A DNA stretch of 55,426 nt, filler included, from Platydemus manokwari (lineage: Eukaryota): assembly GCA_037951405.1 (NCBI GenBank). It is 4 parts of 4 records of this genome, joined end to end, with 100 filler letters (N's around TTAATTAATTAA, not from the genome) between each part and the next. Parts side by side here need not be neighbours in the genome. Positions count along the whole stretch, not along the records: positions 1 to 16,197 come from JBBMOY011199209.1; 3 more parts are not named here. The stretch is one strand, 5' to 3'. Shown one piece after another: positions 1 to 16,197 of this stretch. The notes beneath the pieces were generated by a model that was given only the letters and a program-made list of their open reading frames with translations, ran no database searches and was not told the origin of the DNA. The first letter of the stretch is position 1; each line of letters opens with the position of its first letter. The position numbers and the translations under genes were made by a program.

Positions 1-2579
1 TTACTATGCAAAATGTACTTTAAATAAATAAATATTTTTCAAAAAAAACCGAAATTTTAAGGTTATACACCTAATACATTTTAAAAGTAAAAATAATGAT
101 TTATCAATATTGTTGGTTTTACAAGATTTTCGATGTATTTTTTATCTATTCTGCTAAAATAATCATCCAATCGTATTACATATTTCAGAAAATTATTTTT
201 TTATAATTTTTTATATTTTATAATATCCATCTTTTATAAAATAGTAGCAGCTTATATTGAGAAAAAGTGATTCCAATCATAAATAATAATAACCGCTAAT
301 CAACAACGGTGTTGAGGTTTCATAAGATAGATTTTTTGCTTTAAATGCTTATTACATCTCAAATAATCAGAAATCTTAAATATAAAGATATTGTCGTGTA
401 AGAAATAATCTAGAAATATATGAATAAATAACTCTTGGCACACTTGAACTATTAATTTCGCTAATTAATCATATTCATTCCAAACAATCATACAAATTTG
501 TATGTTGACCAATCCAAATTGTGATAGAGTGAAAATTTGAAACTTATTTGATCAAAGAGAAATTCATGAAATTTTAATACCAAATGAGAAGCAAACATAT
601 AATAAAAAACACATGGCTTTGATTATAAATACAGCAACGAGTATATTGTAGAGTTTGGTATTAATGAATGTATTGATTTATTTATCAATTGTTATCATCT
701 ATAAATATGGTGATTATACCTTCTTGTATTTATAATAATATAGAAATTAAGTACATGTACAATCAAAATAAGGCCTGGCTGTCGAATACAAGAAATATCA
801 AAATTGTTTTCTAGTTATGTAAATGTTTCTTACTAGGCTGTGGATTGATCTGTACTTTAGGTCTGCGGGTGCCCAGATAAGATTGTTGAAAATCCGATTG
901 GTTGAGCAGCAGGGTCATTTGGTATCGTTTGTCTTTCGGTTCTTGGAAGATACTTCCGAGCAGCGATAACTCCGCAATCGACGATATTTTTGGCCTACTT
1001 TCGGAGCCAACATGGAGATATGCTCACTTTCATTATTGAGAAATTATAATCTGATCCGTCCAGGATAATATGGATACGTTAATATGGATACAAAGATATG
1101 CTCATTCATAAACAAATAAAATTTTGAAAAGCTTTTTAATAATGGAAAAATATCGTCTATTAATCTCACAATCAATGTATTATCTAACTAAATAGGTTAG
1201 ATTGATTTAAAGTCTTTCTTAATCAAATATTTATTTGCGCTTTACAATATACGTGGCTGATAACCTATCATCCACTCTTATAACGTGTTTCTTAATAAAA
1301 GAAGCACTCATAAAAGACTTTCTATAAAAATGAATCCCATAAATTGCCAATCATATATAGTTTGTCACAGTATATTTCAAATGATAGATAAGTGATGTGT
1401 AAATACACAAGTTAGTCCAGCTTCAAATGCAATCACATTAGTTATATTGCTTATATCGTAACTATCATTTGTTTATTCGACAGTCGCAGAATTTGAGCCA
1501 CATTTGTCCAACAATCATCACACTAAACCAATCAAATATCGTTTTGTTAATCCATCGCAGAGGTTTGTTAAAAATCCAATGATGTAATCCTGATAACATT
1601 TTTAATTCCATAAAAATCCGTATATAATCAAATTCTTCACTTTCATGTTCCGAATGGGAGATTTTCTGATTTTATTTTTATTGATTGATGGACAAATCAT
1701 TGACAACGGATTGAATGAGAAATAGAAGAACTGAATATTAATTATCAATAAATGGGAAAAATAAATCATCTGTATTCAAAGGAAACAAATTTCGTTGCCG
1801 CAAATACTTTTCAAGTTGAAGTATTTTTGGAAAACGGTTTAGTGAATTATTCAAATGTAAGATTTCGTAATTATGGCTAGCTCATTTCCGTGAACTTGAT
1901 TTCATTGATTCAATGGAACTTGCTTTTTCTTTGTTATCATGGAAAAAGAGAATTATTAATAATTGAAAATAAGCTGCGAATAGTAATTGTTCCCCAATTT
2001 CTCAGGGATTTCATGAATAAATAATTGTATTAGAAGAGTTTTCAGATTATTTTCTTTTCAATTTTTAACAGCTATTTACATAATTAAATACTACCCTGAT
2101 CAAATGTTGTGCACTGTGTCGGAGGGGGATTACTTTGAAGGCGATGGAATTGATTTGAGAGAATAAATAAAGATGTTTCGGTTTATGACAAAATTCTCGA
2201 TCATATTTGATCACAGTAGTATGTTTAAAATTTTTTTTTGGTTTATTACGAGTTAATTTTAGTGATAAATTTTTAAAACAATTTTTCAACTAATAGTATT
2301 TGTGTTTATTTTATTTTAATTTAAATTAATTTTTTCGTTATAACAATTTTAATCCTTAAAATAATTTGTTACTAAAATTCTAATTTTAATTATTCGAATT
2401 TGAATGTTGAAATAAATCAAATAATTAAACAACTCTATAACTGTAAGTTGATTTAAATATTTTGATCAATTATCGATTATTTTAATTCGAATAAAATTAA
2501 ATATTATAATTTAACTTGAAATTGGATTCATTTCAATCTTTCAACTTTTCCATTTTAGTCGACTCCCCAAACATATTTG

Positions 2580-2809
2580 CCCTTGATTATGAAAGTGGTA
2601 TAAGTCATATATTTCTTGTATGGAGATATTAAGGGATTTGCATGTTAAAGAATTAAAAAATATTTGTGCATTATGGAATGAAATATTTTGACAATTAATT
2701 AGCGCCGGTAAATCAGCATTTAATATGATTGTGAAATTTATTACCATTTTTAAATAGAAATTTGGTTTTGAAAGGTTGAAATGACTTATACCACTTTCAT
2801 AATCAAGGG
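2580..2809. mobile_element. MITE (230 bp) with perfect 29-bp terminal inverted repeats
   Basis: 2580-2608 cccttgattatgaaagtggtataagtcat is the exact reverse complement of 2781-2809. The interior is AT-rich and non-coding. CCC...GGG ends are piggyBac-like, but there is no clean TTAA TSD. Confidence 0.7.
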
Positions 2810-3016
2810 TTCATATAACACTTGAAATGTATTAGGAAGAAAAAATATCATGTTTGAAAGAAATGCATTTTGAAAAATATTAATCATTATAATTTATGGA
2901 ATAAATTAAAATATTTTCTGATATTTATAACCAAAATACCCAATATCGATTATAATTTCCATATAACAAAAACCTTTCTAATAAAATTGAACTCTTTTAT
3001 CAGTTTATCGAACTAA

Positions 3017-5124
3017 TTATTCTTCATATTCAGGATAAGAACATAAGTAATCCATAGTTTCATCGTGTCGAATTGATTCCTCAACCTTGATATCCTTTAA
3101 AACATCCTCGCTTTCATAATGGCTTTTGAACTGATTTTTCCATTGGTCTATAATTATATATCAATTCTTTTGAAACAAATATAAGATAAATAACCAGCAT
3201 ATTTATTCCAGGGACCACCTTCCCCACCATATTCAGTTGGTAACATGTCCATTAATCCAGGGATAGTCTTACTTATTTCATGTATATTGGATGATTTTAC
3301 AATCTGGAAACAGAGTCAATTTATCAATACTTATAAAGTTTTTAATAATGATAATGTTAAACCAAGCACGAAACATAATATCAGATAAAAAACTTTTCAA
3401 TAAATTGAAAATCTCTAATTAAAAATAAGTCAGGATGTAATAGATTGTGTTCGAAAACGAAGAATTTACACTAAGAATTTCTAATAAACTCAAGACAAAT
3501 CTTCAGGGATAATAAAGCGATGCGTTTATCAGTGACACACAAGCATGGATAAGACAAGGGCAGTTTGGCTATAAAAGTACATTATATATTCCATCTTATT
3601 CTTTTGTAAATTTAATTGGTGCTCAGTAGATTTATAAGATGATATAAATATCTACTCATTTCTTTTTATTTCATATTTTGTTTTATTTAAGTAATCATTA
3701 TTTATATAAATCACGTCGAGTTTGGTTCATAACTATTAATCGATTCTCATATATCCATAAATCATTAAGTATTAATTATAATAAATCATCATTTTCAGTA
3801 TAGAGAACACCTCATATTACTGATGCATCTTTTAGAGTCAGATATAATCATTCTGGTAGAGAATCTGTTTGTCATCGTTTCATTAAAATTTCTGTGTTAA
3901 TATTTTGAACTATAAAGGTCCCTCTCGACTGTCATATTTCATGTGTTAAAATATATCTTAACTATGCTCTGTAGATACTGATTCATTTATCGTATTATAA
4001 TCTCACTATTATTATGCTGCACATATTCCCACTAAAATCTGAGAAACAATAGCTCATGATATGTCTAATAATAATGATAATGTCATCAATATTAATTATT
4101 ATTCTAATGATCATCAATTTGTTTCAACTAAATTACCAATCAATTACAATTACTCAAATCATAAAAATACTTGGCTATTCATTTTGTCTCTTATGAAGAA
4201 AGACCACATTTTAAAGACGTTATCAAAGTAGTCTGGGACATTGAAATAAACTACTTGTTTGAGTTGCCAAGGATTAACATCCTGTTGATAAGGTATATTT
4301 ATGAAATCTCTTTGATGAAAATAAAATTGATCACTTGAAATATCCTCGCAACATCAATCACTACTTGTTTATCATTCCACGCTTCCATCACCTTTTTGGA
4401 AGCATCAGTCATGTCATAAAATAGAATGATCCCATGTACTTGAGCCTCTTCATCTTGAATTAAAACATCTTGTCCCATAAACAATAATGTTAGATATTTA
4501 TCAATTGGAATAGATTCAGGATTCCAATTTCCTAAAATTAATAATCAATATTTGAACGACAATTTAATTGATTCGTATTAATAAATATTTATTTTTATTG
4601 ATGTGATAAATGGATATTCAGGATAATCAATATTAACTCATTGCCATCAAAACAATAAGCTCATCTTCCTGATTTCTGCCGAGTGGAGTCATTATCCTAA
4701 AACCGAACAAATATTCCTCAATTTAAATCGATAAAAATCAATAATTTATTAACCGAGAGTCCAAAAATTCATCAATCATTGCACCATTAATGTTAGCGCT
4801 GTCATAATAGTGAGGACATCCTTTTGGAGAACATCTTATTGTACAAAAAGTGTCCAATAGCCTTTTAGCTGTGTTCAGATCAAATTTTGCTTGTCTCAAA
4901 AATCGCAACAAAAATTTAGAATCTATTCAAATCATTTATAATATAAAGAAAATATTGATTATCATTATCATACCTGTTGGACAGTTTAAATGTGGCATTG
5001 ATATCGCCCATTTAGCCAGATAATCAATCTGCTCATTGACGAGTGATGGATCTTCTTTCAAATTATTAATTGCATATTGTTTGGATTTCTCGCTAATTTT
5101 CTCATAACAATATTTATCGGCCAT
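3017..5124 (-). CDS. CRAL-TRIO (Sec14) lipid-binding protein, alpha-tocopherol transfer protein/clavesin-like; 7 exons
   Basis: Hand-spliced GT-AG exons 5124-4974, 4922-4754, 4696-4638, 4531-4335, 4281-4171, 3303-3195 and 3147-3017 give a continuous frame. Motifs: DSKFLLRFLRQAKFD (CRAL-TRIO N), EEAQVHGIILFYDM, and LPTEYGG. Confidence 0.9.
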
Positions 5125-6009
5125 TACAAAGTTGGCTGTTTTTTCAAATCAAAATCATTGAATCGCGTTATTTATATGGAAATAGAAATTATAGGCACAA
5201 TGTGATCACAAATGAAATTAAAAATATACACACAGAAGGTAGTGTTTCTAAACTTTCAATCATTGCCGCAAATCAATAACATCAAGAATTTCGTATAAAA
5301 ATCCTTTTATATATTCAACACTTGAGAAATCACATTAATTACAAAATTCTCTTCGCAATTAAGAAATCTTCTAGAATCGCAATTTTCTGTATTTGAGAAA
5401 TATATTAATGTCAAACTTGATAAAAACTGAATTGGAAGTTTATTCACCTGACACTTATCAACATGCTGGTTTATTGTTATTGAGAACTAATTATTTCGCT
5501 TCGAATCGCTACCTTACTCATCGGTTACTATCAAAGTAATGACTTTCAATGTTTGCGATGATTTGTAATTTAATTTATTGTGGTATGTCCTTGTGATAAT
5601 AGAGGTCAAAACTGATAAGAAATATTTCTCAAAGTTTTACTTCTGTTTGATGTAACGTGGGTTTCTTCAAGCACTTTATTACTGTGTCATAGCAGTGAAA
5701 AATATCATTGAAATAAATCCAAAACAAATCCTTTATTTCTATAAATATTATTTAATCCAATAATTATTTAGCTGATAAATTATTCTCTGAAAACAAGCTA
5801 AATTAAAATGTCTCAAAATCAGATAATACAAAGACCGAAGTACCAACTTACTGGAGTAGGTGTAAAATTGCACTTTTCCCTGTCCAGAATATGATGAATC
5901 GGCGAAAGTGTTTCGACCGATATATGGATAAATGAACACCAATTAGTGGAATTGGCTGAGATCCAGAACATAAATTTAAATGGATGGGTTCACTGCACAG
6001 TGCAGCATT

Positions 6010-9000
6010 GCCTCTTCACCTGTGTATTCTGATCTTAGTATCCATATCATTACATTTATTCGATTTATTTCATTAGTTTCATCTCGATTTTTCTACCAGT
6101 TTATCATAATTATTCCATTTTCTCTAATACATCTTTCCCTGTTCCTATACCTATTGCTATTTTAAATAATTTCCTTAATGTGTTAATCTTGCATCGATTT
6201 CTTTGATGTAATTTCTTTGATCATATTCTTCCCATAATTCATTGATGTCCTTACTATTTCTTATTTCTCCATATTCCTGATGAAATTTTGCTAATTCTGT
6301 TAAAAAATCTTCCAGGCGTTTTTCACCTATGACATGCGCATGTACACTGTTTTTATATTTTATATGAATTCGATTAGGCAATTGTTGTTCGTCTTTATCT
6401 TTTATTTTTTCCGATTGTAGCATCTTTTTCCCATGTTTCTTTCCACGACAATATCCTTACCATTCTCATCTCTTTTTGTAAGAATAATTTCTTCATTAAT
6501 TTTGCTTCTATATCTATTCTCGTTATTATTTCTATTTTATTGTCTTCTTCACAACTATCTGCTAACTCACTATTGTCAATTAAACTATTTTCAGGATATT
6601 CTATTAATCCAAATCATATGTCTTCACCATTATTGCAAACTTCCTCATTTTCGACTCCATATTCATTATCTTTGAACAATTGTAACTCGTAATTAACAAT
6701 ATTTTCCTCATCATCAATATAATTCATATTTTCCTCATTTCCTAATTCCTCAACTATTAACTGCGAATCTGGTTCAAAAGGGTGATTTGTAATCATCAAT
6801 TTTTCTATTATCTCTTTTTCCGATTTAATTCCAATTTGTCCTCTTAATTACTAACTACACATATTCTCCTATTTTATATTTCTTCATTTTGCGTTTCTTT
6901 AAATGATTTGTTTTCTCTTACATCTCTTAATTGTACATAGACACTGTCTGACTCATACTGTAAACACCCGAATTCAACTAAATATCCTTCGTCCTTTAAA
7001 TTCTTTATTTTGTGTAACATTATTATTTCTGATGCTATTAGTCCATAATTATCCCCTAACCGTTGTGCTACCTTTCTCTTAATTTTCTTAATAGTTGTGC
7101 ATGCATGTGTGGTGAAATTTATTTCATATTCTTTTTCTCCTTGAAATGCCCATACGTTTACTTTTAATGGTTTTGTAAATCGGGATTTTTCATTATTATT
7201 CTTCTACATTATTCTATTGATTTCCATTCTACATCATTTATTTATATAGTGTCTCTTGCATATATTTGTATTTGTTGAATTATATTCTTGGCTTTTTCGA
7301 ATTCATTTTCATTTGTTTGTATCTATCTTTTCAACTTTTTCTGTCAATGTTAATGATTTCCTTTCTTCTGGTTTTATGTCATATTTGCTTTCTACTTCAT
7401 CTATTTGTTATGCCGATGCTTCTCTCATCATTTCAATTTCATCCATATGCTGTTTTGTCTTTTGCGTTTTGTTATTATCTAAGATTTTCTTTTCTTTTCT
7501 CATTTAATTGTTTTTATCTTCTTTTTCCGTATTTGGATAACATTTCATTACTGATTTTTGGTTGCAATTCATATCATTATTCTCTCTTCATTGATTAAAT
7601 TGTGAATGATCTCTTTCAACATCTTTTGCTGTTCGTAATCCTTCTATCTTTTTGATTAATTCTTCTTTTTCTTCTAATAATTTACTAATTTCACTTTGAT
7701 ATTTCATTTTAGCTTCTTGAAACGATTCTTTTAATTTCTTTGATTTGGCTACTACTATTATTTCTCTTTATATTTTTCTATTATTTTTGTAATTAATATT
7801 CTAATCTTGCTAAAACCTATTCTGATACTGCGGGTAACTTCTACTATTGATCCTATGCTCACAATTATTGTATTTTTGTTATTCATTTTCCTTTTTCCTA
7901 TCGTCGTAATTATTGTTGTAATTTTGCCTATTTCTGTCATAATTCCAATTTTCATGCATTTGATTTTGTTGATTATAATTATAATGTTTCTTTTGAAATT
8001 TTTCTAACATTTTTTTCGACTCATACCAGGTCGCGTTCACATCTTTATTCTGATTTAATGATAGTAAAAATTTTCTTTTTTATTATCTCTAAATACGACT
8101 GCATTAATTAATTGATGTTTCATTGGCGCGCTATATATTATATCATGATTTTCCTAAAAATTTACTCCATAAATTGTTTCAATTTTTCTTGCCTTTTGTA
8201 TTAATTCGTCTAAGTTTTTATATTCAGCCAACGGTATTGAACTTTTTAATGCAGGTAAAAATCTTCTTATAAAATAATCCATCACTATTTGACCTCTTCC
8301 GTCAACTGTTACATATTTAAAATCATAAGCCTTTGCTGCCAATTGCCATAATGCCATAGCATATTATCCTACACTTTCGCCTGATAATTGATATCTATCT
8401 AAGAACTGTTTTACATAATACTCATGGACTTCTTCTGTTATAACTAATTGTTTCTTTAACTCTTCTACTAACTGCGCATAAGTTTTTATATTATTGCATT
8501 TCAGCTTTTTGTAAATTTGTAGGGTGTTTAAGATACAATGATAGACTTTGAAACTTATCGGCCTCGGTCCATCTATGTGTGTCTGTTATTCTATCAAACT
8601 CTTTAAAGAAATCATCGAAAGTTTCTTGCTTTCCATCGTATATCCATAATTCGTTCTTAACTTTGGTACTATCCCAGCTTTATAGATAAAATTGTTAATA
8701 TCCATAATTTATTAATTTTTGAAATTTAATTCGGTCAATTTATTTGCCTATAATGTTCTTAAATTCAATTTTTTTAACTTTCAATTAACTTTTATCCACT
8801 ATCAACTTTAAATTTTGCCTTCTAATTCCCTTAATCAAACTAATTTTGAAATTTAAATTAATTTTAAAATTTCTAATTAACTTTTAATTTCAGTTGTTTT
8901 ACTATTCCTATTTTATTAACTTTCTAAGCAGCTTTTCAAAATTTTATGCATTTTCAAGGTTTCTTAATTATTAATTTTTTGTTCTATTATTTCAAGTCAA

Positions 9001-9393
9001 TTTCAGTCTTATTCGGACCTCCGAAAATTTATCAATGTTATATTGATATTCTATTAAATAAATTTCTCTTATTAGTCTTTAGATGTTCTATTATTGTTGT
9101 TTTTATCTATTAAATACTTGGTTATGTTTTTTGGTTATCGTTTTAAGCTTTTAAGGATATATGAAATGATTTTTATCCTCGCTCGGAGGACCAAATTTTA
9201 CTAACTATTTATGCTTTCAAAATTTTATCAAATTTCAAATGAATTTGGTCCTCACTCGGGGCACCAATAATTGTTTATTAATAACCCTTTATTTTTCAGA
9301 TAATTTGTTCCTTACTCGAACACAAATTATTGTATATTTTTATCAACTTTTATTCTATTTTTAGAAAAAATTTTCTCTTCACTCGGAGCACCA
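6010..9393 (-). mobile_element. Decayed Ty3/gypsy-like LTR retroelement: PBS-bearing leader plus extended gag, 3'-truncated (no pol seen)
   Basis: From ATG 8705, with frameshifts: IYDGKQETFDDFFKEFDRITDTHRWTEADKFQSLSLYL...YQLSGESVG*YAMALWQLAAKAY (retrotransposon capsid-like). Then an N/Q/Y-rich linker, a K/E-rich coiled coil, a UBL-like segment and an acidic stretch. PBS-like TGGTGC(T/C)CCGAGTGA motifs lie at 9177-9393. Confidence 0.75.
9177..9393 (-). repeat. Array of four tRNA-3'-end-complementary (PBS-like) 17-mers
   Basis: Plus strand: cctcgctcggaggacca 9177-9193, cctcactcggggcacca 9250-9266, ccttactcgaacacaaa 9310-9326 (degenerate), cttcactcggagcacca 9377-9393. Start-to-start spacing is 73/60/67 nt. 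Confidence 0.7.
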
Positions 9394-11879
9394 AATATTG
9401 CTTTCGGGGCTTATTGATTTTATTGTTTTACTAAGCTTAAACCTATTTTATACCGCTACTGACTTAATCAATCTCTACGAGTTCTTGATTAAGGCCACAG
9501 GTGTAATTTACCTTATATCGATGTTCCTTCACCTCGCATAGCCTTATTGTGTTATGACAATAGGTGTGGCAGTAGTGATATATTTCACTTAAACTAACTA
9601 TCAGTCTCAAATTTTATAAAACTATAACTCTTTAAAACTAATTACAATGCGTAACAATTTTACAATACCTATATGAATAATAACTAAAGCTTTAATGCTA
9701 CAAATATTTATGAAATATGACACCAATGCTAATTAGCAAACATAAAATAAATAAACTAAAAATTGATGTTAAAACTACACTTCACACGAAGATGTTTTCA
9801 AGACTGCTTACAATTTCAAGACAGAAGCGGTTTATATGTCCTAATCTTGGATTAAAGCCGATGTTAACTCAAGATTTTTGAGCAAAAATTTTATAATATA
9901 AAACACAAGATACAGTATATAATATATTTTATGTAATTTATAGTTACTGTCTTACTTTGGGTCTTCCAGTAAATGCCGGGCATATACAGGAAAATTAGTC
10001 TTCTGAACCTATTGGTCTTCTTTAGTGCGTCGTATTTAAATTTGAATGATGGTTCTTCTCCAGTTGATGTAGCGTGAGACAGCGATAACAACGACAGTAA
10101 TTTGTGAACAGAATTTGTGTCGAAAAATAATATGAACCACTCGCAGATATTTCCTGCGATTAAATTTAATGCCAGTGAATTTATTTGTCGCTGTTAATGC
10201 GCGATATCTCATTACGTATTGATATTTGAAAAATTAATTTATTATTTTAGGGAATTTCGATGAATTTGCTAAAGGTAATTTTATTGTTATTATTATTTTA
10301 CATTGATACAACACAAATTAATACCATTCGTTTGTACTGTCATGCAGATGTATACACATTTTTCAATGTAAATTAATTGTTTTAAGTAACTGGTTGGGCC
10401 AGAACCCCAACATACAGATGAAAATAAATTGTATCCCAATCAATCAATCAATCACTATAACTGTGATTATCCTTCAAATTATAATCAAAATCGTATTCAA
10501 ATGAACTCCGTGGATCAGGAATATCAATATAAGGCGTACCTTCGTTTCATTTATTCAGAACTTGTTTCATAGACATTAAATCACATAATAACATGTTTTA
10601 AAAGGATCAAACCAACAAATATAACCAGTTATTTGAACCATGTCTTATCTAATCGAGTAATATTGTGAAAGACCCCCGAGATTACCAGACTTGAAAATTA
10701 AATTTGAGACACACTCGAATATGTTCATGAAATACTTTGAAGTGCAATATGTTCTCGAATTGATGAGTAATGAATTCGTCTTTATAAATTATGAAAATTG
10801 CCCACAATATAAAAATAAACTTAGGGAGCATTAACAAACATGTTTTCTTAAATTTATTATTATTTATTTATACTAAAGTTCATTATTATCAATATTTTTC
10901 ACCGCTGCATTGGTAATTTTATTTTTGAGAACAGATAGGATATTTCCAATAATGATTGCACTAATAAATAAACTCTAATTGATTTAATCTTTCGCGTTAA
11001 ACTATAAAAAAATATATTTTAACTGCAACAAACTGTAACTGGATAATGATAATATTGAATTAAAAACATAATTAAGAGAAAATCAACAATTTTGTTTTTG
11101 GGAGCTGGATTGGTTAATGGCTTTCGTGCTGCTCATGTAATGCATTTAAGAATATTCTCATTTTCAAATGCTACGTTCATGGAATTCTTTAAATAAGCTT
11201 GAGTTTCACAAACTAACAGTTTGCTATACTTGACGTGTTTAATGGATATGAGTTGACCAATGACTGATTAAAGTGATGAATTTAATTGGTTATTGTTAAT
11301 GTTGTTGTTAGACTTTCCAAATAAATTCTTTGGGTGAAAACGAGTGGAAAATTAATTTAAAATTTTTATATTTACTGTTGAATGTCATGATTTTCAATAT
11401 CGTCAACAAAAACTCTTACTTTTACCTTTGTCACGTGTTTTATTTTTGTGAATTATCATTTTTAGGTTTTATTTTGAGATCTAGAAATTGATTGATTATA
11501 ATTTTCACTTCATTTTTTATTCTTAAAAATGTGTTACAATTGGAATGAACATCAATTTGATGATCAACAAAACACAATTTTATCCATTTGAATATTAATG
11601 GTTGCCAATTCTGTATGAGCAATATAGAGTGATAGTCTAAAATATAATGGGCATCTATATTCAGGTTACAATAATTGAATAAGATTTTCTCAAACTGTTG
11701 ATCTAGAAGAATATTAAATTTCTTATCAATATTTTAGAAATGAGTTCTTATTATTTGATTTATTTAATGATATTTCACTTTTTTACAACGCAATACTTGA
11801 GTTCATTGAAAAGAAGTGTTATTTTAACGGACGATGTAATTCACTGTCTTAAATAGATTTCAAGATGAGATAAATAACA

Positions 11880-13520
11880 ACACACACATTCCAAGTTGTG
11901 TGACTACTTATAAAATTTTCTGCACGAATTCTGATAAATTATTCATGCTCGAATGTGGCTATTATCAATCCCTGTTTTACCATAGACTAAGAATTGATAA
12001 CTTGAGATTCTTCGGAAGTTCTGGTAAATGTACTCAGTCTTGCCTGCGTCTTTTCCCCTTAGATCGTTATTTAGGATATTGAGGCTGACCAATCTGCAAA
12101 ATTGAGGAGCGGTCCGTTGGCATCTGCAATGACATTGATTTCGTATGTCCTGATTGAGTGAAAGAGATTATACTTGGGGAATATGAAACTTCAAAAATAA
12201 ATCGCAACCGTTTATCCAGATATTTGAATTCCAATAGTAATTCAGGATGGAGGCTATTCAAAGGTGTCACTAACCATAAACTGCAGCTTGTATTTTCGTA
12301 TCACGATTATTGGTTAATGTTTTGTCTGAGGGCCTGAAGCTCGATTAGATGAGTCTATCATCTCCAGTTTTCCATTAGAGCTTGGAGATTATATATTTTT
12401 CGGTCACATGAGTTTACCTCTGTGCTAGGTTATTTTTATCTCTGCAATCAGTATTATAGGAGCTTAAAGGTAGTGACTCACGTCCATGGAGTTGGGAATT
12501 TCCTCTAACTTGTAGGTTTTACCCACCTTGCAGATTAAGAATCATCCTCTTCTGATAGTAATGATAGATCCCAACAGAATGTCGAAAATGAGAGAGTAGT
12601 TGGCTAATTATATTTCATATTCCGAGAATTTTGATATCTATTACAGTTTTTAGTGAAACCCAGCCCAAAGATCACAATATTATAATATGAAGAGTCACTG
12701 TATTGTAGGATTTATACTGGCAGATTACTCTCGTCAGGAATATTCGCTTATCTAAGCTGTTATCTATATAGTGATCTAGGAGTTTTGAGACAGTGCCAGA
12801 CCCTTAAACTTAGACGTTAAACTCAATTTCGGATGAGTTTAAAAATTGGCCATTTCTTTGAAATATAAGAATCATACAAGGCACTCGTGACCGTGATACA
12901 TGTGTGAACAACCCTACGTCAACATAACATTGACGCTATCTACTTTACGGTCTATCTATTTCATTGACGCGAGCGTACAAAAGTAGCACGTTAAGCCTAG
13001 CACGGTGTACAAAACGTCAGTAAAAACCATAATTGACCTATTAATTTTGTTGATTTTCATATTTCTACAAATGACATTATCAAATAAGTTAAAATTATTA
13101 CATTGGATCCAATTGTGCCAACATGAATGTGCAATTGTCTCGTGAATAAGCTTGGCTCTTACATTTCTATTCAATTATCTTCGTATGGCAAACAGCGTCG
13201 TTCATACTATTACAAACGCTATCCCGTCGAATTCAAAATCAAATACAACCTAATTACTCAACTTAAAATAGTTGATTGCTCTTACGACTCGAAATCACCA
13301 GGTTTTCCCAGAATATGTACGAAAAGATTGTTCTACAAATTCGTTTAACTATCTCAATGCATTACAAACGAGTTGATTAGGTCAGAAATCCTGGTTTTAG
13401 AGTTCTGTCCTAAGTACATGCTAAAGTTAGGGATCAAAGACACGAATCAATTTAAAAGCCTGTATAAGCTGTTGCAGATGATTTGCTGATTTGTGTAGCT
13501 TATACATTTGTAGTGTAAAT
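11880..13520 (+). mobile_element. Highly decayed RLE-clade (R2/NeSL-like) non-LTR retrotransposon
   Basis: Frame-broken motifs in the expected order: LASA/NDIDFV (~12118, like LAFADD), LCQHEC...RMANSVVHTITNAI (like Zn knuckle plus RHNxVV), and KIVD...EILVL...LKLGI (like the restriction-like endonuclease C-terminus). Confidence 0.45.
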
Positions 13521-14139
13521 AATATAAATTGTCGTCATTTTTACTTTGTCATTTATCACTATGATAATTAATTTATCTATAGAGGGGAAGTTATTCGTCT
13601 CCACGACTATTAGTATTTTCTTTACAAATTCTTTTAACTTAAATTTACTTAAATCCTCGGTTTCATCTATTTATCTTTAACCTCCACTTTTATGGGTTGA
13701 ATATCGATTATCTTTTATAGTTTTCAATTTTTTATTTCTCTTAGTTTTTTATTTATCTCAATTTGATATTCTTTGACATTTAAATCCGAAATCATTTTTA
13801 TAAGAATAATAATATATTTATTATTACAATAATGTTCAACAAATTTTTAAATTTTAAAATCCAGTTTAAATTAAAACTTATTCCATCAGTGTTGTTTTCA
13901 TTTTTTTAATCAAAATAAAAAAATTCTCACATTCTTATATCGTAGCTTTTTTAACAATTTTTTTAATTTTTTAAATAACTTTTATACTAAGAGTTTAACA
14001 TTATTGTTAAAAAAAATCCTTAGTTTTTATGAATATTAATATGGTCTATATATTTTAACATAATTTTTAAATAATTTTACTATTATTTAAATTTTTAAAA
14101 GTTCTTTTTTTTGTTTCATTTAAAGAATCAAATTAATCT

Positions 14140-14345
14140 TTTTTTTAAAATCTTTGATTCTTCGATATTTCTTGGTGTTAATGTTCTCTATGCATTTTGT
14201 AGCTAGTAGATTCTTATAATATTCTTTCCTATCACTTCGTAAGGGCATTCATATCTTTCCTGATCTTTATTCTGTATTTCTTTCTTTGTTAATACCTTAA
14301 CTCCTTTGAATTTGAGTTTAAATGTTGTTCTTTTATAATTATTTT
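14140..14345 (-). mobile_element. Ty3/gypsy integrase C-terminal (GPY/F) remnant
   Basis: FKGVKVLTKKEIQNKDQERYECPYEVIGK..Y*L...RNIE resembles GDKVL...RYEGPYEV. Confidence 0.45.
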
Positions 14346-14488
14346 GATCTTGTTTAATGGTCTTCTTTACCTTCACTCTGTTTATTCTATGTTAGGTTCC
14401 GAATCCATTCCATAATGAGTCACAAGCACATATTACGCCCACAAACATATTCATATAATTAAAATTTCAAAAATAAATCAAATCATAT

Positions 14489-14676
14489 AAATAGAATTTA
14501 TTAATTCCAAAAATAGATTAGAAATTAAAAATAGAATTTATTAATTCCAAAAATAGATTAGAAACTAAAAATAGAATTTAATTATTCCAAAAATTGATTA
14601 GAAACTAAAAATAGAATTTATTAATTCCAAAAATAGATCAGAAAACAAAAATAGGATTTTAAAATTCCAGAAATAG
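14489..14676 (+). repeat. 40-bp tandem repeat, about 4.7 copies
   Basis: Unit atagaatttattaattccaaaaatagattagaaa(t/c)taaaa starts at 14491, 14531, 14571, 14611 and 14651. Confidence 0.9.
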
Positions 14677-16197
14677 AAAAATCGTGATTGGTCACAGTTA
14701 TAACGAAAATTAGTATAAAAGCAGCCGGAGAAACAGAAGAAATCGCCAAAAAGTAAATTAAATTTTTCAGAGTAAAGCAATTATCTAACAGGAAACTCCG
14801 AGAAACGAGAAAAGTTAATTAGCGACTAGACAAGTACAGGAATCTCCGTACAAGCCAAACGATTTAAGCACCGAGGTACAAAGTGACTTATTGATTGATT
14901 TTTATACCATGTCGATAGATTGGGTATCAACTAATATCTCTTCTTTTTTCTCCCATCTTTGTATTAGTTTTTATTTCATTGTACGGTTCACCCGTATCGT
15001 GAATCTTGCCCTCTGGTTAAGCAAACCACGCTTCGCCAGTTCTTTGTTTACACAATCTAAATAATTCAATTGTCATTTAATTGTAGATTGTATTGATTCA
15101 TAATTATATTTTAGTATCACTGCATTATTGTTATTTATTGTCTTATTATTATTTATAATTAAATTCATCTACTTCTATCGAACGCAGCCAATCATTTGGA
15201 GTCTGGTTGGCACCACAACGGGCACAGTAAAATAACAACCAACACCTAAAAACTCGATAATACATATAGAAAGCCAATAGACTTTTTATTGGTATATGCC
15301 CTTTACTGCATCCCTTATTGAAATAATATTTAGTCAATATTCCATTGTTTTAAAGTGAATAATGAATATTGATAATGATCCTCATGATCTTCAAACTAAT
15401 TAATACGCCCCAAATCCCTCAATCCTCAATCTTCTCTCAATATCAACAAATGCAATCCTATTCAACAAGCATAAACTATCCGAGAATACAATGCTCAAAC
15501 AAATTTCAATCCTCAAAGGCTTCGAACCTCAAGCAATTGTAATTCACATAAGTCTCTAATCGAAAAATAGACATCGACGATTAACACATATTATTTTATT
15601 GTGACTTTATGATTTTATGATCTTGAAAAGTGGCATTGCAACTTTATTTGACTTTATTGTATCTTTATTGTATTAAGTAAACAATTTATCTAGATAATTT
15701 TATTGTGAATTATTATTGAATTTTTTGAAAATGAGCAATGATGTATGTGACTTTATAATTGAATTTTATAATTCTGAGGATTATTGATTATAATACGTGT
15801 AGAAAATGATAATAAAGTATAATAAAAAAATAATTAGGAATGAAAATATTATTCATTATATGTGTGAAATTTGAAATAATAAAACAAATAAGAATAAGAG
15901 CGGATTTATGAATAATCTAATAAAATTATCAGAGTAGGAAAAAGAAAATGATTTTATAATCCAATAAGGAAAAAGAAAATAATACCCATAAGAAAAAACA
16001 ATATATGAGCAGTGGGAAAAGTAAAAAAATCACTCACTAAATTGCAAATCTTCTGAGTCTAGGAGAACAACAAGCTTAATTCGTCTGTTTGATCTATCGA
16101 AGAATACTTTGAACTTATCGAAAGATAATAAATAAAAGTAAAGGATGACTAAATAAAAGTTGAGGTTTTTCGGATGTTGAACGAATATATTCAAACA

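What the first reader, a model, noticed from the sequence alone, without database searches (positions are those of the whole stretch)
6925..7167. Ubiquitin-like domain embedded in a retrotransposon Gag polyprotein
Seen: a stop-free minus-strand frame (7209-6877, absent from the ORF track) reads LKVNVWAFQGEKEYEINFTTHACTTIKKIKRKVAQRLGDNYGLIASEIIMLHKIKNLKDEGYLVEFGCLQYESDSVYVQLR. By eye this aligns along the whole of ubiquitin: TIENVKAKI~TIKKIKRKV, KQLEDGRTLSDY~KNLKDEGYLVEF, IQKESTLHLVLR~LQYESDSVYVQLR. There is no C-terminal diglycine, so it would be an integral domain. Inference: an LTR element captured a beta-grasp UBL, which could recruit ESCRT, proteasome or DUB machinery, or act as a decoy. 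I know of no standard gypsy architecture that has this.
Basis: partly seen in the sequence, partly recalled or inferred. Interest (0 to 1): 0.7.

Follow-up and report, generated by a model that had tools for sequence, protein, structure and literature searches.

The report
Dead gag-like gene remnant, ubiquitin likeness unproven
The peptide is real and lies inside a long-dead, heavily broken gene of about 870 codons whose start looks like a retrotransposon capsid protein, but its likeness to ubiquitin is no better than noise and no relative could be found, so the capture of a ubiquitin-like domain is not shown.

Summary
The quoted 81-residue peptide is at 7167-6925 (minus strand). It lies in a 109-codon stop-free stretch, 7203-6877; 7206-7204 is a stop, so the frame does not reach 7209. 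The stretch is part of a decayed coding tract of about 870 codons (8800 to 6170, minus). That tract has far fewer stops than shuffles (z -7.5; antisense z 0.1), about 20 in-frame stops and at least 3 frame changes. Its first ~180 codons look like a retroelement capsid by eye only: no profile, PDB or database search supports this. The window has no LTR pair, zinc knuckle, protease, RT or integrase.

The ubiquitin likeness is sub-threshold throughout:
- Pfam UCH_UBL1: E 0.006-0.009, 16.5-17.1 bits against a cut-off of 24.
- Plexin_RBD: E 0.036.
- Giant-virus ubiquitin HMM: 4.4 bits, reached by 1.1% of shuffles.
- Pairwise alignment with ubiquitin: p 0.03-0.10.
- Two AlphaFold models: pLDDT 44-47. 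Foldseek: nothing below E 0.027.

A zinc-finger hit of equal strength (E 0.006) covers overlapping residues. HMMER against 1.84 billion proteins found no true relative, and word and contig scans found none.

Verdict: a dead, orphan, gag-like ORF remnant. A beta-grasp fold is possible (about 0.3) but unproven. Interest is low.

The parts
6020..9550 (-). Purine-rich unit of about 3.5 kb: 47% A and 17.5% G on the minus strand. It holds everything listed below.
   Evidence: The composition profile shows AT and GC skew confined to about 6000-9550. No second copy exists in the window.
9176..9394 (-). Leader region upstream of the ORF with three copies of a 19-nt G+C-rich motif, TTGGTGCCCCGAGTGAGGA. 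The motif starts with TGG as a primer-binding site would, but it is repeated.
   Evidence: One search found 3 matches with at most 3 mismatches, against 0 expected from 200 shuffles. Alignment A1 shows a fourth, weaker copy near 9022. Neither ARAGORN nor Rfam found a tRNA.
8157..8705 (-). Gag/capsid-like N-terminal part of the decayed ORF. The first ATG is at 8705. The stop-free pieces are 8679-8494, 8585-8367 and 8363-8157. It is broken by one frame change near 8500 and an in-frame stop at 8366-8364.
   Evidence: Translations are. Stop depletion is z -3.7. Gag identity is by eye only: Pfam, PDB, word searches and contig scans gave nothing.
7768..8156 (-). N/Q/K-rich stretch after the capsid-like part, with in-frame stops at 8156-8154, 8057-8055, 8039-8037 and 8006-8004. 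It has no zinc knuckle.
   Evidence: Pfam found nothing.
7204..7767 (-). K/E-rich, coiled-coil-like stretch in the same frame as the ubiquitin-like piece. Seven in-frame stops: 7590-7588, 7506-7504, 7410-7408, 7311-7309, 7305-7303, 7236-7234 and 7206-7204.
   Evidence: The region 8150-7210 is stop-depleted at z -3.6. Pfam gave only noise hits.
6877..7203 (-). Stop-free stretch of 109 codons holding the finding. The stop at 6876-6874 follows it.
6925..7167 (-). The 81-residue segment said to be ubiquitin-like. Low-confidence models give the order strand-strand-helix-strand-strand.
   Evidence: Pfam UCH_UBL1 at E 0.0056-0.0086 and Plexin_RBD at E 0.036, both below cut-off. AlphaFold pLDDT 46.8 and 43.6. 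Foldseek found nothing significant. Ubiquitin HMM 4.4 bits.
6398..6847 (-). Acidic (E/D/N-rich) stretch in a different frame, 150 codons with one internal stop at 6616-6614. It holds a chance 'YIDD' at 6721-6710.
   Evidence: Pfam and PDB found nothing.
6178..6456 (-). Last stop-free piece of the decayed ORF (93 codons), ending at the stop 6177-6175.
   Evidence: Pfam and PDB gave only noise.

Best explanation
The segment is an ordinary piece of a dead gene. A tract of about 870 codons on the minus strand (about 8800 to 6170) once encoded a long protein. It ran from a retroelement-type capsid-like N-terminus through an N/Q/K-rich and K/E-rich coiled-coil-like middle and the 109-codon piece to an acidic tail. 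It now carries about 20 in-frame stops and at least 3 frame changes, so no protein containing the segment can be made. The element is most likely a truncated or non-autonomous remnant of an A-rich retroelement in an AT-rich arthropod-like genome, lying about 0.9 kb upstream of a CRAL-TRIO gene. The 81-residue segment was probably a small alpha/beta module in the C-terminal extension of that protein. Its likeness to ubiquitin is at noise level and does not show capture of a host ubiquitin-like domain. Shown here: the peptide, the decayed ORF, the breaks, and the absence of pol, LTRs and relatives. Inferred: the retroelement origin and that the segment once formed a folded module.
For: The sense strand is strongly depleted of stops along one frame path: cost 29 against 60.8 +/- 4.2 in dinucleotide shuffles (z -7.5), while the antisense strand gives z 0.1. 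Each sub-region alone gives z -3.0 to -4.1. One stop falls inside a tight helical motif rather than in an intron-like gap. Strand-biased A-rich composition is confined to 6020-9550. None of the 29 other stop-free pieces (30 scanned in all) hit a pol domain, and there are no CCHC, PR, RT or IN motifs. There is no LTR pair and no second copy. The ubiquitin signals are all sub-threshold. Noise hits of the same strength occur in other pieces: Peroxin-22 at E 0.0038 and DUF5095 at E 0.0053. A C2H2 zinc-finger hit at E 0.0063 overlaps the same residues. HMMER against 1.84 billion representatives returned one protein, a tandem-repeat artefact.
Against: The capsid-like reading rests on my reading of motifs; no tool supports it. 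The weak hits are not spread at random. Both Pfam hits are ubiquitin-fold families, by my knowledge of those families, and none of the 29 other pieces hit such a family. The top, non-significant Foldseek hits include FERM F1, plexin RBD, PI3K RBD, UBQLN3 UBL, SUMO1 and ISG15. Both AlphaFold runs give the strand-strand-helix-strand-strand order. A real but very diverged beta-grasp module is therefore compatible with the data. Orphan status may only reflect that repeats are masked before gene prediction in animal genomes.
Confidence: 0.55

Rival explanations
1. In the living ancestor the segment was a genuine beta-grasp (ubiquitin-fold) domain built into the C-terminal part of a Gag-like polyprotein, without a diglycine end. 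It acted as a protein-binding module, and this copy is a dead relic of it.
For: Pfam's only two hits are UCH_UBL1 (E 0.0056-0.0086) and Plexin_RBD (E 0.036), matched in register with the strand-strand-helix half. Two AlphaFold runs give the strand-strand-helix-strand-strand order. The weak Foldseek lists contain many ubiquitin-fold domains. PDB phmmer lists the beta-grasp domain of SSL7 at E 0.5. The ubiquitin HMM score is the highest of 101 window pieces. The segment lies in the same decayed ORF as the capsid-like part.
Against: Nothing reaches a curated or conventional threshold. The Pfam score is 16.5-17.1 bits against a cut-off of 24, and PF00240 is not listed at all. The ubiquitin HMM gives 4.4 bits, reached by 1.1% of shuffles, and aligns only the helix. 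Pairwise p is 0.03-0.10. pLDDT is 44-47, and about 35 over the C-terminal half. The best Foldseek match is E 0.027, to a DOCK DHR2 domain, with TM at most 0.5. None of the many ubiquitin-like proteins among 1.84 billion representatives matches at E 0.001 or better. All these signals read the same single sequence, so they are not independent.
Confidence: 0.3
2. The open frame is a chance product of purine-rich, T-poor non-coding DNA and never encoded protein.
For: Composition alone produces long open frames here. The antisense 125-codon open frame at 7221-7595 is matched by 20% of shuffles. No relatives exist.
Against: A sense-strand run of 109 codons or more appears in only 0.75% of shuffles. 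The whole 2.6 kb tract follows a low-stop frame path at z -7.5, and the piece itself gives z -3.0. The amino-acid make-up is varied (W, C, H, Y, F) rather than low-complexity.
Confidence: 0.06
3. The piece is an exon of a living host gene. A possible acceptor AG sits at 7205-7204 and a GTAAGA donor-like site at 6921-6916.
For: Splice-like dinucleotides flank the piece. The neighbouring CRAL-TRIO gene shows that the genome has short introns.
Against: No protein in 1.84 billion representatives resembles it. The flanking sequence in the same frame is protein-like but studded with stops. Stops and a frame change fall inside motifs rather than in intron-like gaps. There is no polypyrimidine tract upstream, where the sequence is A-rich.
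Confidence: 0.04
4. The N-terminal half of the piece is a decayed C2H2 zinc-finger repeat.
For: The best PDB sequence hit is the BCL11A zinc-finger region at E 0.0063 and 20.2 bits, residues 8-46, sharing the 'GEK.Y' linker and 'HAC..'.
Against: The Cys and His ligand positions are not kept (alignment). Pfam lists no zf-C2H2 hit. None of the many zinc-finger proteins in the 1.84-billion library matched.
Confidence: 0.03

Closest known systems
Gag (capsid) of Ty3/gypsy and BEL/Pao LTR retrotransposons and their domesticated kin (Arc, PEG10/RTL)
   Same: The 5' part of the decayed ORF (8705-8157) starts with an ATG and has the 'x-D-G-x(3-4)-F/W..F...F......W.e.dK...L...L' pattern. That is followed by 'Q..GESV..Y...l..LA' and 'F..gL......l.......l.el...A..iE'. 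From my knowledge of these families, these patterns mark the two helical lobes of retroelement capsids. The sense strand is A-rich, as in retroelements.
   Different: No Pfam gag family, PDB capsid or Arc chain, or database protein matches any piece. There is no CCHC knuckle, protease, RT, RNase H or integrase and no LTR pair. The ORF continues for about 690 codons of non-gag sequence.
Ubiquitin and ubiquitin-fold domains (Pfam ubiquitin clan: PF00240, UCH_UBL1 PF22900, Plexin_RBD PF20170)
   Same: The size is about 80 residues and the predicted element order is strand-strand-helix-strand-strand. The helix 'TTIKKIKRKVAQRLG' is lysine-rich and amphipathic. There are weak profile hits to two ubiquitin-fold families.
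   Different: All scores are below the cut-offs. The segment shares 15 of 76 identities with ubiquitin, p 0.03-0.10. There is no C-terminal diglycine. The C-terminal half is not modelled with any confidence.
DDI1/Ddi1-type proteins (UBL + retropepsin-like domain), reviewed in PMC7072860
   Same: This is the one well-known architecture that joins a ubiquitin-like domain to a retroelement-derived domain.
   Different: In DDI1 the UBL is N-terminal and the partner is a protease. Here no protease exists, the putative module lies about 500 codons into a gag-like ORF, and it is not a confirmed UBL.
Gag-like proteins that engage the ubiquitin system in trans (PEG10 and RTL8 with UBQLN2; PMC12772957, PMC7873701, 10.1101/2021.04.21.440788)
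   Same: They show that gag-derived proteins do interact with ubiquitin-like-domain shuttle factors.
   Different: In those cases the ubiquitin-like domain belongs to the host partner, not to the Gag chain.

Membership tests
Ubiquitin family / ubiquitin-fold clan | Significant match to a family profile, at or above Pfam's gathering score | tested here: not met
   UCH_UBL1 scored 16.5-17.1 bits against a cut-off of 24. Plexin_RBD scored 14.5-14.6 bits against 27. PF00240 was not listed even at E up to 10.
Ubiquitin family / ubiquitin-fold clan | Sequence similarity to ubiquitin beyond chance | tested here: not met
   An HMM of 71 distinct giant-virus ubiquitins scored 4.4 bits, reached by 1.1% of shuffles. 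Pairwise local alignment gave p 0.10 and semi-global p 0.03. No ubiquitin chain appeared in PDB phmmer at E up to 10. There was no ubiquitin-like protein hit in 1.84 billion representatives.
Ubiquitin family / ubiquitin-fold clan | Beta-grasp fold: a mixed sheet wrapped round one helix | tested here: inconclusive
   Two single-sequence AlphaFold models had pLDDT 46.8 and 43.6, with the order strand-strand-helix-strand-strand. Foldseek found nothing at E 0.001 or better. The best matches were E 0.027 (DOCK DHR2) and E 0.69 (ezrin FERM). No alignment could be built because no relatives exist.
Ubiquitin family / ubiquitin-fold clan | C-terminal diglycine, needed for conjugatable members only | tested here: not met
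   The sequence ends ...VYVQLRDVRENK with no GG. This excludes a modifier but not an integral ubiquitin-like domain.
LTR retrotransposon (Ty3/gypsy, BEL/Pao) | Pair of long terminal direct repeats | tested here: not met
   No direct repeat of 40 nt or more flanks the unit. blastn of the unit against the window found only itself and a 48-nt internal motif. A 3' LTR could lie outside the 16.2 kb piece only if the element were much longer than the skewed unit.
LTR retrotransposon (Ty3/gypsy, BEL/Pao) | Gag recognised by a profile or by a structure relative | tested here: not met
   Pfam, PDB phmmer, the word searches and the contig scans were all empty for the three capsid-like pieces. The pieces are only 62-73 residues long. 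A joined read-through could not be submitted because no reference for it is possible.
LTR retrotransposon (Ty3/gypsy, BEL/Pao) | Pol domains (protease, RT, RNase H, integrase) and a CCHC nucleocapsid | tested here: not met
   None of the 30 stop-free pieces scanned across the window gave a Pfam hit to these domains. A motif scan of all six frames found no CCHC, D[ST]G, HHCC or credible YxDD context.
LTR retrotransposon (Ty3/gypsy, BEL/Pao) | Primer-binding site complementary to a tRNA 3' end, next to the 5' LTR | tested here: inconclusive
   A motif starting with TGG lies about 470-690 nt upstream of the first ATG, but it occurs three times. It could not be matched to a tRNA with the tools, and the window holds no tRNA.

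The most novel reading that the evidence does not exclude
An arthropod-type retroelement family once carried an integral ubiquitin-fold domain in a long C-terminal extension of its Gag, in the order capsid, coiled coil, ubiquitin-like domain, acidic tail. No such architecture turned up in three full-text searches of the held literature. Such a domain could let the particle protein dock directly on proteasome, DUB or ESCRT factors. This locus would be a dead witness of that family.
Probability: 0.2. Interest if true: 0.6.

Novelty: new member of a known kind. Interest (0 to 1): 0.22.

Why it matters
Confirmed in living copies, a Gag with a built-in ubiquitin-fold domain would be a new accessory-domain architecture for retroelements. 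It would also be a natural case of a particle protein wired directly to the ubiquitin system. On the present evidence the locus is a decayed, orphan, gag-like ORF remnant, which is common in AT-rich animal genomes. Two points are useful for the scan. A colinear by-eye alignment of about 20% identity to a 76-residue protein is expected by chance in a few per cent of composition-matched sequences. And stop-depletion path analysis can show that an unlisted open frame belongs to a much longer dead ORF.

Tried and rejected
- **Alternative genetic codes.** No reassignment gives a long ORF. The neighbouring CRAL-TRIO exons use the standard code with a roughly 50-nt intron. Rejected.
- **Word-index protein searches.** Searches with the 109-aa piece and two capsid-like pieces were empty. 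They see only proteins of 0.55-1.75 times the query length, so they say little about longer proteins.
- **Full HMMER search of 1.84 billion representatives.** The single hit, P0001, is a 36-residue tandem-repeat artefact. Its E-value comes from seven summed weak repeats. Rejected as a relative.
- **Contig scans.** Viral, metagenome (2) and prokaryote genome (2) scans were all empty.
- **Exact-sequence look-up.** None of eight window ORFs is in the collection.
- **PDB phmmer.** The ubiquitin-like piece and five other pieces gave only noise. The BCL11A zinc-finger hit (E 0.0063) was rejected because the metal ligands are absent.
- **Foldseek on two low-confidence models.** Nothing significant.
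They give p 0.0005. I set this aside as post-hoc selection after the whole-length tests gave p 0.01-0.10.
- **Rfam and ARAGORN.** Nothing, even with Rfam at E up to 1.
- **Biased modelling, not done.** I did not fold the candidate with an alignment of ubiquitins, because that would force the answer.
- **Joined or typed sequences, not done.** Two steps had no possible reference. One was a joined read-through of the three capsid-like pieces, with X at the breaks, for Pfam or a fold. The other was a joined CRAL-TRIO exon model. I searched the pieces and exons separately instead.
- **Human sequence.** Nothing here looks human.
Full report
**What is at the coordinates**

Translating 7209-6877 on the minus strand gives M, a stop, and then 109 open codons (7203-6877), ending at the stop 6876-6874. 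The frame has no ATG, GTG or TTG before the ATG at 7020, which is why the ORF list omits it. The piece of the window I was given (1-16197) is 28% G+C. It has no long ORF under any genetic code.

**Setting**

Base composition marks one unit of about 3.5 kb, roughly 9550 to 6020. Its minus strand is 47% A and 17.5% G. Downstream on the same strand lie exons of a CRAL-TRIO lipid-transfer gene (5124-4302). Pfam gives CRAL_TRIO at E 9e-6, above its cut-off, and a weak CRAL_TRIO_N hit. The exons use the standard code and include a roughly 50-nt intron. I searched them exon by exon and left out the joined model. This looks like an AT-rich arthropod-type genome. Nothing suggests human sequence.

**The piece belongs to a long dead ORF**

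In 80-codon windows from about 8860 to 6300, one frame at a time carries 0-5 stops, while the other two carry 5-16.

I ran a dynamic-programming path that counts each in-frame stop as 1 and each frame change as 3.

| Sequence tested | Path cost | Dinucleotide shuffles | z |
|---|---|---|---|
| Sense strand, 8800-6170 | 29 | 60.8 +/- 4.2 | -7.5 |
| Antisense strand | 33 | 32.7 +/- 3.2 | 0.1 |

Equal-length controls elsewhere in the window cost 41-54. Each sub-region of the sense strand is depleted on its own:

| Sub-region | z |
|---|---|
| Capsid-like part | -3.7 |
| Middle part | -3.6 |
| The 109-codon piece | -3.0 |
| Acidic tail | -4.1 |

The 109-codon piece shares its frame with the 188 codons upstream (7767-7204), which carry seven in-frame stops. 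A stop and a frame change follow it within about 30 nt.

Overall the tract has about 20 in-frame stops and at least 3 frame changes over about 870 codons. At about one stop per 44 codons, an open run of 109 is not exceptional. The next 150 codons carry a single stop. So nothing suggests that this segment was preserved in preference to its neighbours.

One stop (8366-8364) sits inside a tight helical motif and not in an intron-like gap. The locus is therefore a pseudogene, not a spliced gene.

**Is the ORF a retrotransposon Gag?**

By eye, 8705-8157 has the motif pattern of the two helical lobes of retroelement capsids. An A-rich sense strand is also typical of retroelements. That is all the support there is.

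- Pfam, PDB phmmer, two word searches and two contig scans gave nothing for the three capsid-like pieces.
- The pieces are only 62-73 residues long. A joined read-through could not be submitted, so these negatives are weak.
- None of the 29 other stop-free pieces scanned across the window (30 in all) hit protease, RT, RNase H or integrase.
- No CCHC, D[ST]G or HHCC motif occurs in any frame. The only in-tract 'YIDD' lies in the acidic stretch and has no RT context.
- There is no LTR pair and no second copy in the window.

The label 'gypsy' is therefore unsupported. 'Retroelement-derived gag-like ORF' is my best inference, not a demonstrated fact.

**Is the segment ubiquitin-like?**

Family and structure searches:

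- Pfam gives two sub-threshold hits. UCH_UBL1 scores E 0.0056-0.0086 and 16.5-17.1 bits against a cut-off of 24. Plexin_RBD scores E 0.036. The ubiquitin family PF00240 is not listed.
- Hits of the same strength that are surely spurious occur in other pieces: Peroxin-22 at E 0.0038 and DUF5095 at E 0.0053.
- The best PDB sequence hit is a C2H2 zinc-finger region at E 0.0063. It overlaps the same residues but lacks the metal ligands.

For a direct test I fetched natural ubiquitin genes from giant-virus contigs. The search pattern was a degenerate DNA pattern built from a fragment quoted in the finding. It yielded 71 distinct 76-residue sequences.

| Test against ubiquitin | Result |
|---|---|
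| HMM of the 71 sequences | 4.4 bits, aligning only the helix; 1.1% of 5000 composition-matched shuffles do as well |
| Pairwise, local | p 0.10 |
| Pairwise, semi-global | p 0.03, 15 of 76 identities |

Two single-sequence AlphaFold runs gave pLDDT 46.8 and 43.6. Both showed the order strand-strand-helix-strand-strand, and the C-terminal half scored about 35. Foldseek found nothing at E 0.001 or better.

Against dismissal, the weak signals lean one way. Both Pfam hits are ubiquitin-fold families, by my knowledge of those families. The 29 other pieces gave no such hit. The weak Foldseek lists contain FERM F1, plexin and PI3K Ras-binding domains, UBQLN3 UBL, SUMO1 and ISG15. All of these signals read the same single sequence, so they are not independent. 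I put a real beta-grasp ancestor at about 0.3.

**Relatives**

HMMER against 1.84 billion representatives returned one protein. It is a tandem-repeat artefact whose E-value sums seven weak repeats. Everything else was empty:

- the word search;
- scans of viral, metagenome and prokaryote genome contigs;
- the exact-sequence look-up.

None of these could be run.

**Verdict**

This is a dead, orphan, gag-like ORF remnant. The literature library holds papers on Gag-like proteins that meet ubiquitin-like domains in trans (PMC12772957, PMC7873701) and on DDI1-type UBL-retropepsin proteins (PMC7072860). Three searches found no Gag with an integral ubiquitin-like domain. If living copies confirmed it, the architecture would be a new variant. 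For this locus, interest is low.

Noticed in passing
window 4302-5124, minus strand: Exons of a CRAL-TRIO (Sec14-like / tocopherol-transfer-protein-like) gene. The start ATG is at 5124. A roughly 50-nt intron lies between about 4960 and 4926, and further exons include 4926-4741 and 4544-4302, possibly more down to about 4160. Pfam CRAL_TRIO is at E 9e-6 and CRAL_TRIO_N at E 0.012. The exons were searched apart and the joined model was not built.
   Followed up: partly
window 9176-9394, minus strand (a weaker copy near 9022): A 19-nt G+C-rich motif, TTGGTGCCCCGAGTGAGGA, occurs three times within 220 nt of the leader upstream of the gag-like ATG, against 0 expected by chance. It begins with TGG like a primer-binding site, but it is repeated and was not matched to any tRNA.
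   Followed up: partly
window 14463-14677: A tandem array of a 40-nt A-rich unit, 5.4 copies with 86% matches.
   Followed up: no
window 7221-7595, plus strand: The longest open frame in the window (125 codons, rich in F, L, I, Y and S) is the antisense of the K/E-rich tract. About 20% of shuffles give one as long, so composition explains it.
   Followed up: yes
window 12000-13000: An island of higher G+C (0.36-0.39 against 0.28 overall). The plus-strand frame 11840-12508 is interrupted only by TGA. The pieces scanned gave no Pfam or Rfam match. Unexplained.
   Followed up: partly
window 7066-7182, minus strand (residues 8-46 of the 109-aa piece): The best PDB sequence hit is the C2H2 zinc-finger region of BCL11A (E 0.0063), sharing a 'GEK.Y' linker-like motif. 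The zinc ligands are absent, so I judge it chance.
   Followed up: yes
window 6710-6721, minus strand: A 'YIDD' tetrapeptide, the RT active-site motif, sits inside the acidic stretch. It has no RT context and no RVT Pfam hit, so I judge it chance.
   Followed up: yes
P0001 (protein library, not the window): A 659-aa predicted protein with nine or so near-identical 36-residue tandem repeats. It reaches E 1.6e-6 by summing weak repeat matches, which shows how repeat proteins inflate whole-sequence E-values.
   Followed up: yes
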